From Euprymna scolopes (Eukaryota): a DNA stretch of 64,000 nucleotides. Shown in pieces: positions 11,452 to 53,080 of the stretch; within the stretch, counting starts at the first letter, position 1; the number at the start of each line of letters is the position of its first letter. The stretch lies in assembly GCA_053919585.1 (NCBI GenBank), contig CM132795.1; one strand, written 5' to 3'. The position numbers and the translations under genes are program-made. The notes beneath the pieces were generated by a model, which was given only the letters and a program-made list of their open reading frames with translations, made no database searches and was not told where the DNA came from.

Positions 11452-11814
11452 CTGAAAATAGAAAAGATTGAATATTTTGACTATATAAATATTCATAAGA
11501 ACAAGTTAAAAAAATACATTTGAAACAGATTTCATGGCAATTAGAATTCGTTTGCCTTTATATTTCCAGACATTTTTCTACAAGAATGATTTCTATTCAT
11601 TTTTTTGGCACTTATGCATATGTCTTGAAGCAAAAAAATTAACAATAACAACACAAGTGATGCTTTAAAGATTTCTTTTGAAAGCAATGCTCTCAATAGT
11701 TTCATTTTAAACTACAAGTAGCAAAGATCCCAGCGTCGTCCAGGAGAGATTATTTAAAATTTAAAAGCAAAAGAAAATGTTTTACATTCTTTGATTCAAC
11801 ATTTCCTTGCAGAA

Positions 11815-12127
11815 ACTGTGGTATAGTGGAATAAGTATTTGGTAAAATTCAGTTGTAAGTCACACTCTTCTGGAGGTTGAAGGTTCAATACCCAGTGTGG
11901 GCTACACTCAAAATACAATTGTGAATTACATAGGACTTTTACCAATTCATAACTGATGGAACGACAGCATGCTGATCCTGTGGATTACATAAAGTGTTCT
12001 GTTTGAAATTCCCTGAAAATTCTGGAGTTTGACAAAGATACACCTAAAAGTCAGAAGTTACACTGGCCGAAACGCTGAGCAAATAACACTCAAAATGAGA
12101 ACAATAGTTTGAATAATCCAAATAATG
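11815..12127 (+). mobile_element. Family-2 tRNA-headed SINE-like element
   Basis: A-box-like TGGTATAGTGG (~11818), B-box-like GGTTCAATACC (~11882), decayed HHR-like tail ~12040-12078. Confidence 0.8.
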
Positions 12128-12541: not shown

Positions 12542-13351
12542 GTAATTGCCACATATAGTTTTTATTACTTACTATACGTATATATTTCTTTATATATATG
12601 CGCGTTTAAGACAAATTGATAATGTTTGATATTCTTTCATGCTAGAATCAATTGAAGTATTTACTAGCGGTAAAGTGCAACGGCTAGCTCTTTCTGTGTA
12701 CTATTGAAGTAGAGACAGCTGGAAACCATGAATGACTGGAAAGCCCTGAGATATTAGAATGAGTGACTTGTGTCATAAGGATTTATAAAAACTTAGACAT
12801 TTTAGCTGCAGCTCAGAACTCCTTGAAGCCCATGAAACATGAGCGGTAGAATTAGAACAACATATAGAAGCAGTAGCCATCAAGAAATGTAACTCATCAT
12901 CAAAGTTCAATAGAACTGCTTTATATGAAAGCTAAGAAGTTCTACAGCAAACCCACTTGAGCTGGAAATGCTTTGGGTTTTCTTAGGACTAGTCACAAAA
13001 TGCACAGAACAGATGGCTAGCTTGCAGTTTGTGCAAACTTTAACAGATAATAAAGACTGTTTGCTTAAACATTGTGGTTTTTAAGTGTTTCCAGTAATGA
13101 CCATGTCATAACTTAGACTTAATTTAAATGCCTATATTAAGTTGCTGTTCACTGTTGTTAAGCATTAATTGGAGAGGGTGGTTCTGAGAAAGCCATATGG
13201 GTATAACAGTTTCATGCGCACCCCTGGAGAAACGACTTCACTAATCTCAATTTATGAATCCTAAACTCATTTGATTGCAGTGCAATGGACTATTATGCGT
13301 AGAGCGCATTTGATACCAAACATACTGCCCACAACACCAACAATAGGAGGT

Positions 13352-13480
13352 GATTATGGCTAAGTGGTTAATGACACAAACTGATAACCTAGGTGTGCTC
13401 AGTTCGAATCCACAGAAGTACTTTCATTTAGGGATGTTGGCAACCGTCACGTGGTCCCTTCCGTAAGTAACCAATGTTTT
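13352..13480 (+). mobile_element. tRNA-derived SINE head
   Basis: A box TGGCTAAGTGG (~13357) and B box GTTCGAATCC (~13402) at tRNA-like spacing; no complete cloverleaf. Confidence 0.55.
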
Positions 13481-13539
13481 TTCTAGAAAAAATTGTAACT
13501 GTAAGATAGTGGGGAAATGAATGCCAACAATGACCATCT

Positions 13540-13860
13540 GATTCAACAGTAACATGAACGATGAGCTGACTGCCAAGATCAAAAAGGCAGGAAAGAGAGA
13601 GAGAAACTAATAATGTTCTGATGTTCTTTCATTCCAAAATGAATTGAAATCTGTTAAGGACTGGTCTCCTGAGTCACATGAGATCTCATGGTTGAAATCA
13701 ACGAAACGACTAAACAAGCGACACAAATGAGTTTAATATAGTTATGTGCAAACGAAAATCAGTCGACTTGCATGTCATATCTGCAGCAAGATTTGTGAAA
13801 ATAAGTTGAGCCTGCTTAGCCATCTGCGTGCCTACAAAAGAACAATCATCCACTATCCAC
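13540..13860 (+). mobile_element. RTE (BovB-like) LINE remnant
   Basis: NSNMNDELTAKIKKA fragment and C-terminal zinc finger CHICSKICENKLSLLSHLRA, both typical of RTE ORF ends. Confidence 0.6.
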
Positions 13861-13870
13861 TAGTGTGTGT

Positions 13871-13912
<42 letters not shown>

Positions 13913-45042: not shown

Positions 45043-45891
45043 TATAATATTTTAGCAAGTACACAAACTTAATACTTCTTACAGTGTTTCTCACAGAAAA
45101 AAAATTCGCCATTAAAATAAGAAGTTATCACCACCGTTACCGCATATATATATATTTTTTAAAACTTTTACAAAATATAACTTTTATTTTTATTTTTGTG
45201 TTTTGTATTACAAAATAAACTATTTTTACTGACAAAACATCTGTTGAAAATTGAGTTGAAAATCCATTTTATAATTTCTTCTTATTTGACATCAACAATG
45301 CAATTCTGCCCTCATAACAGAATATTTTAACTTGTCGATCGAATAATGATAACATTATTTCATGAGAAAAATTCTTCCCATCGATGATGACAATGGAAGT
45401 TATGAAGCTGACACAAAAGGTGAGAGGTTAATCCTACGCTTTCCGCTTTGGTGTAACATGACCAAAGTTCCATAGACATTTTATTCTTAGCTCAAGTTAA
45501 GATTCATTCAAAATATTTATGAGAAATCTATGAAAGGTTGGTGAAAGTCAATCTGCATAAATTATTCAATTTTTACATGAAATTCTGATTGCGTACAATT
45601 GTTTCCTTAGCAATGTACGATTGTGGGTCACAAATTGGTAAAGAATTGGAAATCTACGATTCGACAGTTTTTCTGGGTAATCACTTAAAGCACGTTCAAT
45701 CACGAAATCGACTAATAAAATTACGAACAGCGAAACAGTACCTTATGTAGATGACTATAATGCTCCCTATTTCGGGTTGAGCATATTGAGAAGTGATATA
45801 CAAACTGCCATTAGCGTATTAAGCGATGCTTTTTTTTGTAAACAAATCGAGCATAAATATTTGGACGATGTCAAAACATCGTTAATTCACT

Positions 45892-46037
45892 ACCCGTATA
45901 GCGTAATGGTGATAAACCTTTACTGTCGTTTGGGCGGTCGGGTTTTGATCCCGGCTTGAGGTAGTTGTCTGTCTAGCCGCACTGATGACCTGTGATACAG
46001 CAAAGCAGTACTGTGTTTGGATGACTATATACATATA
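45892..46037 (+). mobile_element. tRNA-Asp-like head + hammerhead SINE, copy with inactivated ribozyme core
   Basis: Same sequence family as 49681-49826. CTGATGA at 45982-45988 is retained, but GAAA has become AAAG and the cleavage-site TA has become TG. Confidence 0.85.
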
Positions 46038-49200: not shown

Positions 49201-49459
49201 CGAAGGTCTTTCTGCTCATCATGGTATATTTTGCTTTATTCCCTAATCATCTTTATCATTTCCTGGAAAAGCCCCCACCTCCCAAATAGGGCGAAACGTT
49301 GAAAATTTCCTAAAAGGCTAAATGTTTTTCTTTCTTTTTCTATAACGTCATAATATCATACTTATATATATATATATATATATATATAAGTTCGAGCACT
49401 TTGCGACGGGTAAATGCTAATTTTAGAGGCATTTGAGGAGAAATATTTACGGGCACTGA

Positions 49460-49619
49460 TTCTTGTTCTGATGGTTAGAGCCACCGACTGTCAACGCGAT
49501 GATTGTAGGTTCGATCCACGGCGGGGAAAAGGTGTATGTCTAGCCGCACTGATGAGTTGTGATACAACGAAACAGTACTGTATGTGGATGACTATATATA
49601 TATATATATATATATATAT
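49460..49619 (+). mobile_element. SINE: tRNA-Asp(GTC)-like head + hammerhead ribozyme + (TA)n tail
   Basis: Head TGGTTAG..CTGTCAACGCG..GGTTCGATCCACGGCGGGGA resembles eukaryotic tRNA-Asp; the HHR follows within ~20 nt. Confidence 0.85.
49544..49587 (+). ncRNA. Type I hammerhead ribozyme motif, intact core
   Basis: Stem I CCGCA/TGTGG; CTGATGA 49549-55; stem II GTTGT-gat-ACAAC; GAAA 49569-72; palindromic stem III CAGTACTG; GUA site, predicted cleavage after 49582. Confidence 0.9.
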
Positions 49620-49680
49620 TGGTCAATAGTTTACTGGGATAAATTTACCCACAGAAAAAGTGAAAAATGATGTAGAATCA

Positions 49681-49826
49681 ATATATATATATAGTCATCC
49701 ATATACAGTACTGTTTCGCTGTTTCACAGCTCATCAGTGCGGCTAGACAGGCAACTACCTCAAGCCAGGATTGAAACCCGACCATCTGTACGACAGTCAA
49801 GGCTCCTAACCACTACGCTATTGGCG
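49681..49826 (-). mobile_element. SINE: tRNA-like head + hammerhead ribozyme + (TA)n tail, tail-to-tail with the 49460 copy
   Basis: Minus strand reads TAGCGTAGTGGTTAG (A box)..CTGTC..GGTTTCAATCC (B-box-like)..gtctagccgcaCTGATGA... Confidence 0.85.
49699..49742 (-). ncRNA. Type I hammerhead ribozyme motif, intact core
   Basis: CCGCA-CTGATGA-GCTGT-gaa-ACAGC-GAAA-CAGTACTG-TA-TATGG; one mismatch in stem I. Confidence 0.85.
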
Positions 49827-50106
49827 GCTGCTTAACTATTGACCAATAAGGAGCTACACTGTCGACCTGAGATGACAAAAATGATCAATTATCTTCATTC
49901 AGAAATTTGGCGGTATGAAGAGAGCATGAAAGTATTTAATTATTTTGAAAAGCTCCCCATGAAAGGGTTCTTAAAATCTTTGAAAGTTCACAAATCAAGT
50001 CCCGGCCATAAAATATAAATATTTGATTTTTTAAAATGAATGAACTCACATTCATTGAGTTGCATTTACAAATGGATTGAGGACTGAAAGGGTGGGGGGC
50101 GAAAAT

Positions 50107-53080
50107 GTATGGAAGTTTGTACGGTAAAAATTGGAGACAAGGATGTTAGATTTCAACTTGACAATGGTAGAGATTTGTCTATTATAAATCACCATACTTG
50201 GTGAAAAATTGGAAAACGAGGATAATAAGAACCAAGAAAGTTGCTCCTTCAGTAACTGGAGAAAGAATAAGATTCGAAGATGAGATTACTACTAATGTAA
50301 CGTTAACGGATAAGGCACTGAAACTGAAGATGTTTGTGTTAAGAAACACTGAAAACCTTTTTGGTACAAACTGGATCCAAAAATTTGAACTCTGGGACTC
50401 GCTCATTAGCGATTTTTGTCAAAAAGTGAATAACCTTACAGCCGACGCTGAAAAACTAAAAGACCTGAAAGAGTTGTTCCCCAATGTCTTATATATATTT
50501 TTTCTGAAAAACTAGACTGCTGTAAAAAAATGGAAGCGAAGTTCAAATTACAAGATAATGCTACCCCAGTCTTCAAAAAGAAACGAAGCGTACTCTTTGC
50601 CTCTATGCAAAAGACCAGGGAAGAACTGGACAGACTCGTTAAAACAGGAATTTTGACCACGGTCACCTACAGCAAGTAGGCTCTCCCCACTGTGTATGTA
50701 AAGAAAAAATTTAAAGATATCAAAGGCTGTGCAGACTTCTTGTCTGGGTTGAATGCAACACTAATGGATCATCATGTCCTTTACACAGCTCCGAGGAAGC
50801 GTTGACTAAACTAAATTGAGGGAAGCGTCCTTACCAATTCCTGTTGAAGAAGAAAGCTCAAAACATTTGTGTATTTCTACTCACAAAGGACTATTTGAAT
50901 TCAATAAGTTAGCTTTCAGAATCAAAGTAGCACCAGCTATCTTTCAAGAAATAATCGATACAATGTTGAGTGGCCTTGATTTTTCTGTCAGATACTTGGA
51001 GGATATTCTAATGAAAAGCTAAACTATAGAGCAACATAGGAAACACGTTTTTTCAGGTATTCGAAAAGATAAATGAGTATGGATTCACACTTAAAGACAC
51101 TAAATATTAATTTTTCTTTAACAAAATATAGTACTTAGGGTAGATAATAGATAAAAACGGTTGACGACCCGATCTAGAAAAGTCCATAGCAATAAAAAAA
51201 AATATGCCTGAGCCAAACACTATAACAACATTTCAAAGTTTTTTAGGCTTAGTTAACTACTACCAATCTTTCATTCCTAATATGCACACATTGCACGCAC
51301 TTTTAAACAAACTACTTAGGAAGGACAAGGTTTGGAACTGGACTGCGGAATGCAAGATGGCATCCAAAAAGCTGAAAGAGGTGCTCATATTGGAACTATA
51401 CCTGACTCATTACAACCCAGATTTAGACATTATCGTCGCAAGTGATGTGAGCACATATAGAATCAGTGCGTGTATCCTGCATAAAATGCCAGACAGATCT
51501 GCAAAACCTACAGCAAATCTGTCGAGAATCCTACTATTTGCAGAAAGGAATGATTCCCAGATAAAGAAAGAATCCTTAAGTGTCATTTTCGCGGTAACAA
51601 GATTCTACATATACCTGCATGGATGACACTTAATTACAAACATATCACAAGCTGCTGATCTCTATCTTTGGCTTGAAGAAAGGGTTGCCCATATTTCTCC
51701 ATCTTTGGAGCCTGTTCGCCGTATGTGTATACGGCGAACAGGCTCCAAAAATGGGGAATAATCCTACTGAATTACGAATTTGATATGGAGTTCGTTCTGT
51801 CAAAGAAATTAGAACATGCAGCCGGCCTATCTCGGTTAATATCAGGAACTGGTGAACCACTAGAAGACTCTGTGATTGCATCACTATGATCAGGCAGAGA
51901 TTACAGTTCAATCCTATGCAACACTATGAAAGAACTCTCTGTTAGCCTGGACGATATAAAGAAAGAAGCCGAAAGTGACGACTTTATAAGAGAAACCAAG
52001 GAAAAACTGCAGACTGATGAACAAGTAACAGAGATTTTCTCAACATGCGACCAGGTATTATCATATCAGGAGAGAGTAGAAAAATCTTAAAGGATTTTCA
52101 CATAAGACACCTTGGCGCCACCAGAATGAAAAGTGTAATGCGTTCATACATGTATTGGAGAAATATAGACAAGGATATTGAAGAAAAGGTGAAAGCATGC
52201 AGGGGGTGTGTACTAGCTGCTAAAGTTGCACCAATTCAATTTAGTCCATGGCTCAAAGTGAACTACTTGTGGCCACGGATACACATGGACTACACGAAAT
52301 CACTTGTTGGACAGTACTACCTCATAGTAATGGACAGTTTCTCCAAGTAGCCAGAGGTCTTTAGGTGTAAAAGTCCGACTACTGACTTCACTATAAAAAC
52401 TCTTCATGAGTTATTTGCACGGTTCAGAGTGGTCGATTGTTTAGTGTCAGATAATAGCACTCAATTTACATCCGGAGACTTTAAAGAGTTTATGGAGAAC
52501 TTCCAAATGGACCGCATCACAACTCTGGCACACCACCCAAAATCAAACGGACAGGCAGAAAGATTCGTGGACACCTTGAAGAACACTCCATCTGAAAATG
52601 CTTTGCAACAATTTCTTAAGTTGTACTACATAACTTCTAACGAGAATACACCATCCCAGATGTCTCCGGCGGAAGTGATGTTTGCTAGAAAAGCATGGCC
52701 AGTCTTTGGCAGATTATTGCCAAAAACAGATAAAATCTGCAAAGACAACTGTTCCCATGCCAGGAGAAAAAATGTTCTTGCAGATGCACAAGGATAATAA
52801 GACTTTCTGGGAACAGGGAATGTTCTACATGATGGAAGGACGCACTTTAGATAAGTCAAGTGAAACTCTGCCAGAAGAGATGTTAGACCTACTGTAGGAC
52901 GCGTTTGATTTATTTAAATCAAATTTATCAAATTAATTTATTTAGGCTGCGTTTATTTATTTAATACAGAAATACGTTGTTCCGGCAGAAAAAGGAAACT
53001 GATGGATCCCTTGAAAGTCAACCTGATAAAGAAAAACATTAAGAATACTTTGGGGAAATAAATCTTCTGAGGTGGGGGTA
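50107..53080 (+). mobile_element. Decayed Ty3/Gypsy LTR retrotransposon pol (protease-RT-RNase H-integrase)
   Basis: In order: FQLDNG (protease), THKGLFEFNKLAF..APAIFQ..YLEDI (RT), IVASDVS (RNase H), H..HLG...CRGC, RIHMDY, SDNSTQF and SNGQAERFV (integrase). Many stops and frameshifts; purine-rich tract ~53069-53078. Confidence 0.93.

What the first reader, a model, noticed from the sequence alone, without database searches (positions are those of the whole stretch)
49460..49826. Minimal SINE made of a tRNA-Asp-like Pol III head fused to an intact hammerhead ribozyme
Seen: three ~140-bp copies (45892-46037 +, 49460-49619 +, 49681-49826 -) share the layout A box / CTGTC anticodon loop / B box, short linker, type I hammerhead, (TA)n tail. 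Two copies keep all core nucleotides (CUGAUGA, GAAA, GUA). Stem II shows a compensatory change (GCTGT/ACAGC versus GTTGT/ACAAC) although the two heads have diverged strongly, which suggests the ribozyme fold was conserved during amplification. Stem III is a palindrome (CAGTACTG), and stem I can extend through an internal loop (GTC/GAC). Established: Schistosoma Sm-alpha, newt satellite 2 and retrozymes are HHR-bearing repeats, and palindromic stem III allows dimeric hammerheads. Inference: this is a self-cleaving, Pol III-transcribed retroelement associated with TA microsatellites, possibly mobilised by Penelope-like elements. I do not know a description of this family but cannot verify novelty.
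Basis: partly seen in the sequence, partly recalled or inferred. Interest (0 to 1): 0.88.

Follow-up and report, generated by a model that had tools for sequence, protein, structure and literature searches.

The report
Hammerhead ribozyme retroelement in TA microsatellites
The three copies belong to an abundant, young, non-coding mobile repeat of a 5.9-Gb mollusc genome. Its unit of about 290 bp joins a tRNA-like promoter module to a self-cleaving hammerhead ribozyme, which makes it a new member of the known retrozyme / Sm-alpha class, not a new 140-bp kind of SINE.

Summary
All three copies carry A-box and B-box motifs and a type I hammerhead (HHR). The core is intact in c2 and c3 and decayed in c1. 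All three end in (TA)n.

The "140-bp minimal SINE" is a truncation artefact. The true unit is 284 bp in family A (c3, c1) and about 312 bp in family A2 (c2). Each unit is a spacer, then the tRNA-like module, then the HHR.

Insertions are 0.5- to 2.5-unit head-to-tail arrays. Their 3' end is fixed at ...GGATGACTATA(TA)n and their 5' ends vary. TA repeats usually lie on both sides.

An exact 29-mer of the HHR tail occurs 10,861 times in the genome. At least five families (A, A2, B, C, D) share the layout with different sequences. This gives clear covariation in stems I and II and an 8-10-nt palindrome at stem III that predicts a double hammerhead.

Young Penelope-like elements with ORFs of about 806 aa also end in (TA)n, but the 3' ends I sampled show no homology to these units.

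PolyA RNA reads cover the element but show no ends at the cleavage site.

Verdict: a retrozyme / Sm-alpha-like non-autonomous retroelement, a new member of a known kind. Earlier scan notes on other DNA of this genome reached the same reading.

The parts
45728..46037 (+). c1: an old, decayed 1.1-unit copy of a family-A-like element. It has a partial upstream HHR (45728-45757), a spacer, a tRNA-like module (A box 45899-45909, B box 45941-45951), a degenerate HHR (45971-46025) and a TA-rich tail.
   Evidence: It is 77.5% identical to the 284-bp unit over unit positions 1-283. The sequence was read. The core is mutated: AAAG in place of GAAA, and a GUG site.
49389..49619 (+). c2: a family A2 copy, 5'-truncated inside the spacer (unit position 119 of about 312), with (TA)n on both sides.
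   Evidence: It is 91% identical to unit A2 positions 119-312. Boundaries were set against 19 other A2 loci.
49464..49518 (+). c2 tRNA-like module: an A-box-like motif at 49464-49474 and a B box (GGTTCGATCCA) at 49508-49518.
   Evidence: The family A2 consensus has 3 A-box and 1 B-box mismatches to the consensus motifs, with a 33-nt gap. The positions in c2 were read. No tRNA was called.
49538..49592 (+). c2 type I hammerhead with an intact core. The predicted cleavage is between 49582 and 49583.
   Evidence: Hammerhead_3 scores 22.4 bits, E = 0.21. Helices are shown and covariation.
49681..49833 (-). c3: a family A copy truncated exactly at the start of the tRNA-like module (unit position 155 of 284). 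It ends in GGATGACTATA(TA)n and lies tail-to-tail with c2.
   Evidence: It is 97% identical to unit A positions 155-284. The 5' end is shared with 5 other loci.
49768..49820 (-). c3 tRNA-like module: A box TAGCGTAGTGG at 49810-49820 and B box GGTTTCAATCC at 49768-49778.
   Evidence: The A box matches the consensus 11/11 in this copy and the B box 9/11, with a 31-nt gap.
49694..49748 (-). c3 type I hammerhead with an intact core. The predicted cleavage is between 49704 and 49703 on the minus strand.
   Evidence: Hammerhead_3 scores 22.4 bits. Helices are shown and covariation.
49593..49693 (.). Target (TA)n microsatellite remnants at 49593-49619 and 49681-49693, with 61 bp of unique DNA between them.
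   Evidence: Sequence. In family A, 27 of 30 3' flanks and 19 of 30 5' flanks are TA repeats.
49617..49848 (.). A 15-nt perfect inverted repeat (49617-49631 and 49834-49848) that brackets c3 plus adjacent unique DNA. It may be a junction scar of integration.
   Evidence: pair I8. It was not found at the other 89 loci.

Best explanation
The copies belong to a superfamily of non-autonomous, non-coding retroelements of the animal 'non-LTR retrozyme' / Sm-alpha type.

Shown:
- A unit of about 284-330 bp consists of a spacer, a tRNA-like A/B-box module and a type I hammerhead, followed by a short A/T-rich end.
- Units are dispersed over all chromosome-size contigs as head-to-tail arrays of 0.5 to at least 2.5 units.
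- The 3' end is invariant inside a (TA)n microsatellite and the 5' ends vary.

Inferred mechanism:
- Transcripts that hold two or more units, or two RNAs, pair through the 8-10-nt stem III palindrome to form a double hammerhead.
- This cuts out unit-length RNA, which a host tRNA ligase may close into circles.
- The reverse transcriptase/GIY-YIG nuclease of a Penelope-like element nicks (TA)n. The TA 3' end primes on the UAUA that follows stem I. Copying a multimer or a circle then yields 1.x-mers with ragged 5' ends.
- The tRNA-like module most likely supplies an internal Pol III promoter, as in Sm-alpha. This is the least secure step.
For: - Unit and arrays: alignments of 30+20+20+20 loci show homology extending 140-190 bp upstream of the tRNA-like part and second, 5'-truncated units. 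Exact-word hits recur at a 284-bp period, up to three in a row. L091 is a 2.5-unit array.
- Ends: 31 of 31 family A copies end at unit position 14...GGATGACTATA|(TA)n. Lengths run from 143 to 712 bp. Flanks are mostly TA repeats.
- Abundance and youth: 10,861 exact 29-mers against 0 for the reversed control. First-look candidates number 1,644-2,996 per family, with copies 91-99% identical to the query. Family C has 234 exact HHR words.
- Ribozyme: five families keep the core, the NUH site and three helices with different sequences. Of the cells, 90.5% are paired, against 20-42% when partners are slid. Six pairs change on both sides, and 0 of 500 shuffles reach the observed covariation score.
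- Double hammerhead: cofolding two copies gives this fold as the minimum-energy structure in all five families. The central dinucleotide of stem III is self-complementary in every family (UA, UA, GC, CG).
- Promoter module: A and B boxes lie 26-44 nt apart in all five families, against 3 chance pairs in 128 kb. Family A has no T4 run in 30 of 30 copies. There is a 5'-end hot spot at the start of the module, in 6 of 31 copies.
- Helper: the GIY-YIG search gave 15,395 candidates, many with open frames of about 806 aa in tandem/inverted sets. Five sampled copies end in (TA)n after a 570-nt 3' UTR with an HHR-like motif.
- Literature: pLTR partial tandems, (TA)n targets and 3' HHRs are PLE hallmarks (PMC8557442). 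Retrozymes are described as PLE derivatives (10.64898/2026.07.22.740005).
Against: - No cleavage or circles were seen. In two polyA RNA-seq runs, reads cross the cleavage site into (TA)n (146-176 reads), no read ends pile up at the site, and 80-84% of reads run into unrelated flanks. Most signal is therefore read-through of embedded copies. PolyA libraries are, however, poor at detecting such RNAs.
- Monomer folds do not form stem III, and their energies are not better than shuffles (z from +0.03 to -1.07). The whole unit is not markedly structured (z = -1.45), unlike the 'highly self-paired' retrozyme circles.
- Rfam scores are below the gathering thresholds.
- The tRNA-like part is not recognised as a tRNA and lies inside the unit.
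- Families A2, B, C and D have TTTT 13-55 nt after the cleavage site. A Pol III transcript from the head could therefore not carry the downstream spacer in those families.
- There is no significant similarity between the units and the 3' UTRs of the two PLE lineages sampled, so the helper is not identified.
Confidence: 0.72

Rival explanations
1. One reading: a minimal, roughly 140-bp Pol III SINE made only of a tRNA-Asp head and a hammerhead. It would be transcribed from the head and retroposed as such.
For: c3 and five other family A copies begin exactly at the head (AAGCAGCCGCC) and end at the TA tail, spanning about 143-150 bp. Families C and D have TTTT right after the ribozyme, so head + HHR + terminator looks like a compact Pol III gene. 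A and B boxes are present.
Against: In family A, 25 of 31 copies carry conserved sequence upstream of the head, up to 2.5 units. c1 and c2 themselves include spacer. The same holds in families A2, B and C. No tRNA of any identity is detected.
Confidence: 0.1
2. Solo or partial pseudo-LTRs of an autonomous Penelope-like element that I did not sample. The repeats would be pieces of a coding element, not an independent non-autonomous family.
For: PLEs form partial tandems with HHR-bearing pLTRs and are abundant here (PMC8557442). An unchecked earlier scan note (s1-295599) reports a GIY-YIG relic followed by a tRNA-type module and an HHR.
Against: The 3' UTRs of two PLE lineages (seven copies) lack the unit, and alignment scores are no better than shuffles. 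Arrays consist of units only, with no ORF longer than 64 aa. In 90 loci only one (L016) has a PLE nearby, and it is about 750 bp away.
Confidence: 0.1
3. An ordinary tRNA-derived SINE moved by a LINE, in which the hammerhead is a non-functional relic.
For: No cleavage ends appear in RNA reads. Hammerhead models score below threshold. LINE RT fragments are common in the loci.
Against: The ribozyme architecture is kept in five families whose stems differ by compensatory changes. Head-to-tail 1.x-mers with a fixed 3' end in (TA)n are not the LINE/SINE pattern. There is no poly(A) and no recognisable LINE-derived tail.
Confidence: 0.06
4. A satellite DNA that spreads by recombination or replication slippage in TA-rich DNA, not by reverse transcription.
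For: There are tandem units with a 284-bp period.
Against: Arrays are short (at most about 3 units in the sample) and are dispersed on at least 44 contigs. They have a precise common 3' end and ragged 5' ends.
Confidence: 0.02

Closest known systems
Sm-alpha / Sj-alpha elements of Schistosoma (SINE-like, tRNA-derived, hammerhead-bearing; Ferbeyre et al. 1998 and Laha et al. 2000, as cited in PMC2770079)
   Same: A tRNA-derived Pol III-type module plus a type I hammerhead in one short non-coding unit. The hammerhead has a stem I internal loop. Copy number is at least 10^4, with both tandem and dispersed copies.
   Different: There is no sequence relationship and the phylum differs (a mollusc). 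Here at least five families share the layout. The head is too decayed for tRNA detection, whereas Sm-alpha is called tRNA-Gln by tRNAscan (PMC2770079). Integration targets (TA)n. Cleavage has been shown for Sm-alpha but not here.
Animal non-LTR retrozymes (coral, mussel, axolotl; PMC7229834, PMC7761336)
   Same: A type I HHR inside repeats of about 170-400 bp, arranged from dimers to multimers. GC content is 45% or less. There are no LTR, PBS or PPT features and no ORF. A weak helix III favours dimeric cleavage, as in amphibians.
   Different: Retrozymes are said to lack promoters and conserved motifs (PMC7761336), whereas these carry an A/B-box module. Arrays here are mostly 1.x-mers with a defined 3' end in (TA)n. 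The circular RNA that defines the class functionally was not shown. The unit is not predicted to be strongly self-paired.
Penelope-like elements and their pLTR hammerheads (PMC8557442; Cervera & de la Pena 2014, PMC4209133)
   Same: Partial tandem insertions, adjacent inverted copies, a (TA)n target preference, an HHR near the 3' end, and hammerheads that need dimers.
   Different: These units have no RT/GIY-YIG ORF. The HHR here is a full canonical type I with a 3-4-bp stem III, not the minimal PLE variant. No homology was found to the PLE 3' UTRs sampled.
Newt satellite 2 hammerhead repeats
   Same: A repeat of about 330 bp with a type I HHR whose short stem III makes it active as a double hammerhead (Forster 1988, cited in PMC7761336).
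   Different: Newt repeats form long satellite arrays. These are short, dispersed arrays with retroposon-like ends.

Membership tests
Hammerhead ribozyme, type I | Conserved core: CUGANGA, GAAA and an NUH cleavage triplet (H not G) | tested here: met
   c2, c3 and the consensus of families A, A2, B, C and D have all three (GUA or GUC sites). c1 fails this test. Family B has a U.U at the base of stem II in its major variant.
Hammerhead ribozyme, type I | Three helices around the core, open at stem I, supported by covariation | tested here: met
   In total 90.5% of cells are paired, against 20-42% in slid controls. Six pairs have double changes, and 0 of 500 shuffles reach the observed score. 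Stem III pairs are invariant, so they are uninformative.
Hammerhead ribozyme, type I | Score at or above the Rfam gathering threshold (RF00163: 34 bits) | tested here: not met
   Hammerhead_1 scores 23.6 bits (family D) and 17.8 bits (family C). Hammerhead_3 scores 22.4 bits for c2 and c3. Nothing passes at gathering level. The likely cause is the short stem III.
Hammerhead ribozyme, type I | Self-cleavage | tested here: inconclusive
   PolyA RNA-seq shows no ends at the site, and reads cross it uncut. The libraries are unsuited to this test, and single embedded copies cannot form the predicted dimer.
Animal non-LTR retrozyme | Type I HHR inside head-to-tail repeats of about 170-400 bp, non-coding, low GC, no LTR/PBS/PPT | tested here: met
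   Units measure 284, about 312, about 309 and 265-320 bp. The tandem period is 284 bp. GC is 0.33-0.45, and the longest open stretch is 64 aa.
Animal non-LTR retrozyme | Expression as unit-length linear and circular RNA | tested here: inconclusive
   RNA-library contigs and reads hold the element. No back-joined reads and no unit ends were seen. Genomic tandems would in any case mimic circle junctions.
tRNA-derived SINE | Internal Pol III promoter: A and B boxes at tRNA-like spacing | tested here: met
   All five families have both boxes, with 0-3 mismatches each and gaps of 26-44 nt. The background is 3 pairs in 128 kb.
tRNA-derived SINE | Head recognisable as a tRNA (cloverleaf or CM score) | tested here: not met
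   ARAGORN (also at a relaxed threshold) found none in the window and 90 loci. The Rfam tRNA model gave no match at E up to 5-10.
tRNA-derived SINE | Element begins at the head and ends in a LINE-type tail or poly(A) | tested here: not met
   The head is internal to the unit. Only 6 of 31 family A copies start there. The tail is a fixed short motif merging into (TA)n.
Penelope-dependent non-autonomous element | PLE-type insertion anatomy: partial tandems, inverted neighbours, microsatellite target | tested here: met
   c2 and c3 lie tail-to-tail. The PLEs of this genome also end in (TA)n.
Penelope-dependent non-autonomous element | Sequence shared with the terminus (pLTR) of an autonomous PLE of the same genome | tested here: not met
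   Local alignments of units A, A2 and B to the 3' UTRs of two PLE lineages are no better than dinucleotide shuffles. Only two lineages could be fetched.

The most novel reading that the evidence does not exclude
These could be promoter-bearing retrozymes, in which the tRNA-like module kept in at least five families is functional. It could act as an internal Pol III promoter, a reading fitted by the terminator-free 284-nt unit of family A, which would allow multimeric Pol III transcripts. Alternatively it could be a handle for tRNA-processing or ligase enzymes. The palindromic stem III would enforce cleavage only in multimers. A still-active Penelope-like element that shares the (TA)n target would copy the product. 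That would give the first animal retrozyme system with both its transcription signal and its helper in view.
Probability: 0.3. Interest if true: 0.6.

Novelty: new member of a known kind. Interest (0 to 1): 0.4.

Why it matters
Reviews of animal retrozymes leave two questions open: how the elements are transcribed ("no promoters") and which autonomous element moves them (PMC7761336).

This genome offers a favourable case:
- several very young families (up to 99% identical copies) with a conserved A/B-box module;
- a precise 3' junction in (TA)n;
- a young Penelope-like family with intact ORFs and the same target.

It also bears on repeat annotation. If this 5.9-Gb, 46-contig mollusc genome is a decapodiform cephalopod, it belongs to a group reported to hold almost no SINEs and about 40% unclassified repeats (PMC13218726). 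More than 10^4 of these tRNA-like/ribozyme units would then be unrecognised there.

The kind of element itself is not new.

Tried and rejected
- Rfam at gathering level: nothing.
- ARAGORN and the Rfam tRNA model on the heads: nothing. 'tRNA-Asp' is therefore dropped.
- Monomer and unit folds are not better than shuffles. The dimer energy gain is not significant against shuffles in 4 of 5 families (5-39 of 100 shuffles do as well); only the predicted topology is informative.
- I looked for a PLE link by sequence. BLAST and Smith-Waterman of the units against seven 3' ends from two PLE lineages gave only TA-repeat hits or chance-level scores.
  - An eye-caught resemblance between CTCTTGA...GTTGAG in the PLE HHR-like motif and the start of the spacer failed this test.
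  - So did a resemblance between the PLE end TCGGATTTAATCC and the family A B box (44 of 300 shuffles score as well).
- I looked for an inverted duplication of the flank at other loci, as seen at c3: none.
- ORFs in the loci and window gave no PLE protein next to the elements, except in L016.
- RNA reads showed no cleavage ends and no back-joints. The strand bias over the spacer cannot be interpreted without knowing the library chemistry.

Full report
**Observation**

All three show the stated order: A-box-like motif, B-box-like motif, hammerhead core, TA repeat.

c2 (+) and c3 (-) keep CUGAUGA, GAAA and a GUA site. c1 has lost all three signatures. The stem II difference (GCUGU/ACAGC versus GUUGU/ACAAC) is real.

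Rfam finds nothing at gathering level. In E-value mode it gives Hammerhead_3 at 22.4 bits for c2 and c3. ARAGORN finds no tRNA.

**The real unit**

The window lies in a 5.9-Gb assembly with 46 chromosome-size contigs and about 33% GC. Sequencing runs that hold it carry mollusc labels. A decapodiform cephalopod is my inference (PMC13218726 for size and karyotype).

A search of the genome with c3 gave 1,644 first-look candidates. The 40 that were scored were all 95-98% identical.

Aligning 30 loci with their flanks showed that homology continues about 140 bp upstream of the tRNA-like part. Many loci also carry a second, 5'-truncated unit with its own hammerhead.

- The family A unit is 284 bp: spacer, tRNA-like module, HHR.
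- The exact word CGAAACAGTACTGTATGTGGATGACTATA occurs 10,861 times, against 0 for its reversed control. Hits often recur at a 284-bp period, up to three in a row.
- L091 is a 2.5-unit array.
- All 31 family A copies end at ...GGATGACTATA followed by (TA)n.
- Their 5' ends lie anywhere, giving lengths of 143-712 bp. Clusters sit near the unit junction and at the first bases of the tRNA-like module; none fall at unit positions 34-110.
- TA repeats flank 27 of 30 3' ends and 19 of 30 5' ends.

In the window:
- c3 (49681-49833) is a copy truncated exactly at the head.
- c2 (49389-49619) is a family A2 copy that starts inside the spacer.
- c1 (about 45728-46028) is an old 1.1-unit copy, 77.5% identical to the unit.

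The "140-bp minimal SINE" is therefore a truncation product and not the element.

**A superfamily**

The fetched loci happened to contain other elements of the same design. Searching with them defined these families:
- A2: about 312 bp.
- B: about 309 bp.
- C: 265-320 bp, with copies 99% identical.
- D.

Each has a spacer, A and B boxes 26-44 nt apart, a type I HHR 19-30 nt further on, an A/T-rich end and (TA)n. A-box plus B-box pairs are rare elsewhere, at 3 in 128 kb.

None of the heads is recognised as a tRNA. They are best called tRNA-like Pol III-type modules of unknown parent.

**The ribozyme**

The five families keep the core and an NUH site, but their stems differ.

| Helix | Variants seen |
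|---|---|
| Stem I | UGUGG/CCGCA, UGUAGG/CCUGCA, CGUAG/CUACG, AGUGG/CCACU |
| Stem II | GCUGU, GUUGU, AUCC, GAGGU, GUCG, each with its complement |

On an alignment of nine representatives:
- 90.5% of cells pair, against 20-42% when the partners are slid.
- Six pairs change on both sides.
- No shuffle out of 500 reaches the covariation score.

Only four to five lineages are independent, so the statistics are modest. The pattern is nevertheless that of a maintained hammerhead.

Stem III is an 8-10-nt perfect palindrome in every family: ACAGUACUGU, ACACUAGUGU, ACACGCGUGU and ACACGUGU. As a hairpin it can form only 3 bp. Monomer folding does not recover it and is no better than shuffles.

Cofolding two copies gives the classical double hammerhead as the minimum-energy structure in all five families. 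In that fold stems I and III form between the two copies. This matches what is established for newt, amphibian and Penelope hammerheads (PMC7761336).

**Helper**

A GIY-YIG search found 15,395 candidates. Many have open frames of about 806 aa and sit in tandem/inverted groups.

Five copies of the dominant lineage share a 570-nt 3' UTR. It holds an HHR-like motif with a one-base insertion in the CUGANGA box, and it ends in (TA)n. A second lineage does the same.

The target preference and the partial-tandem anatomy therefore match Penelope-like elements (PMC8557442). They also fit the recent proposal that animal retrozymes derive from them (10.64898/2026.07.22.740005).

However, the units show no significant similarity to these 3' UTRs. 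The helper is inferred, not identified.

**RNA**

Contigs of four polyA RNA-seq runs hold 63-75% of the element's words. Raw reads of two polyA runs cover the element on both strands.

- 80-84% of the reads run on into unrelated flanks.
- 146-176 reads pass from the ribozyme into (TA)n uncut.
- No ends accumulate at the cleavage site, and no back-joints are seen.
- The spacer is strongly strand-biased.

Most of the signal is therefore read-through of embedded copies. Cleavage, circles and Pol III transcription remain untested, because polyA libraries are unsuited to detecting them.

Two features bear on Pol III. Family A has no T4 run in 30 of 30 copies, which would let Pol III read through several units. 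The other families have TTTT 13-55 nt after the cleavage site, which would stop it. The promoter role of the head is thus the weakest link.

**Comparison and verdict**

The architecture is that of Sm-alpha/Sj-alpha (PMC2770079) and of the animal non-LTR retrozymes (PMC7229834). The integration features are those of Penelope-like elements.

What is particular here:
- the host phylum;
- five families with a conserved A/B-box module, whereas retrozymes are said to lack promoters (PMC7761336);
- the precise (TA)n junction;
- the youth of the copies.

I file it as a new member of a known kind, of moderate interest.

Earlier notes of this scan on other DNA of the same genome reached the same reading. 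I treated them as leads only.

Noticed in passing
window 49617-49631 and 49834-49848: A 15-nt perfect inverted repeat (TATTGGTCAATAGTT) brackets c3 plus 48 bp of unique DNA. It looks like a fold-back junction made at integration. It was not seen at the other 89 loci.
   Followed up: partly
units of families A, A2 and B (e.g. window 45776-45790; L091:463-477): The spacers share the motif GTTGAGCA(Y)(W)TT about 20-30 nt after the unit start, although the rest of the spacer has diverged. Its function is unknown.
   Followed up: partly
L075:1786, L023:1067(-), L040, L060:1400, L084:24, L094:1083: A palindromic, MITE-like repeat in (TA)n carries a hammerhead-like CTGACGA-ATCC...GGAT-GAAAC motif on both arms of a long inverted repeat. 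It does not have a simple hammerhead topology.
   Followed up: no
L068:472, L014:791, L024:2690; L036:745, L082:505 and 2814: Two further hammerhead-like motif families have no tRNA-like head. One has a CCUAUAGG palindrome at stem III. They may be Penelope-type or other retrozyme ribozymes.
   Followed up: no
G000:C3:22986700-22988400 (L092), L093, L094, L096, L097; G000:C12:14496712-14504984: A very young Penelope-like family has open frames of about 806 aa and tandem/inverted copies. Its 570-nt 3' UTR ends in (TA)n and holds an HHR-like motif whose CUGANGA box has one extra U (CUUGAAGA).
   Followed up: partly
G000:C553:29800-31550 (L095): A 36.8-kb contig whose best GIY-YIG match reads like a bacterial UvrC gene. 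It is probably a contaminant or symbiont contig in the assembly.
   Followed up: no
G000:C11:1.68-2.16 Mb: Sixty-one of the 62 scored tRNA model hits (the 61 best) lie in one half-megabase stretch, which suggests a large tandem tRNA gene array.
   Followed up: no
window 11804-11962 and 13342-13481: Two other A-box/B-box pairs without a hammerhead are probably unrelated tRNA-derived repeats. A family B tail fragment sits at 13858-13906 before a (TA)n run.
   Followed up: no
window 51165-52794: Fragments of an LTR-retrotransposon pol gene (RNase H-like domain, E = 1.5e-19; weak integrase core).
   Followed up: no
L091:734-860 (family A spacer): In two polyA RNA-seq runs the spacer is covered 5-10 times more in one read orientation than in the other, while the ribozyme region is covered on both. 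This hints at a strand-specific transcript of multi-unit copies, but the library chemistry is unknown.
   Followed up: partly
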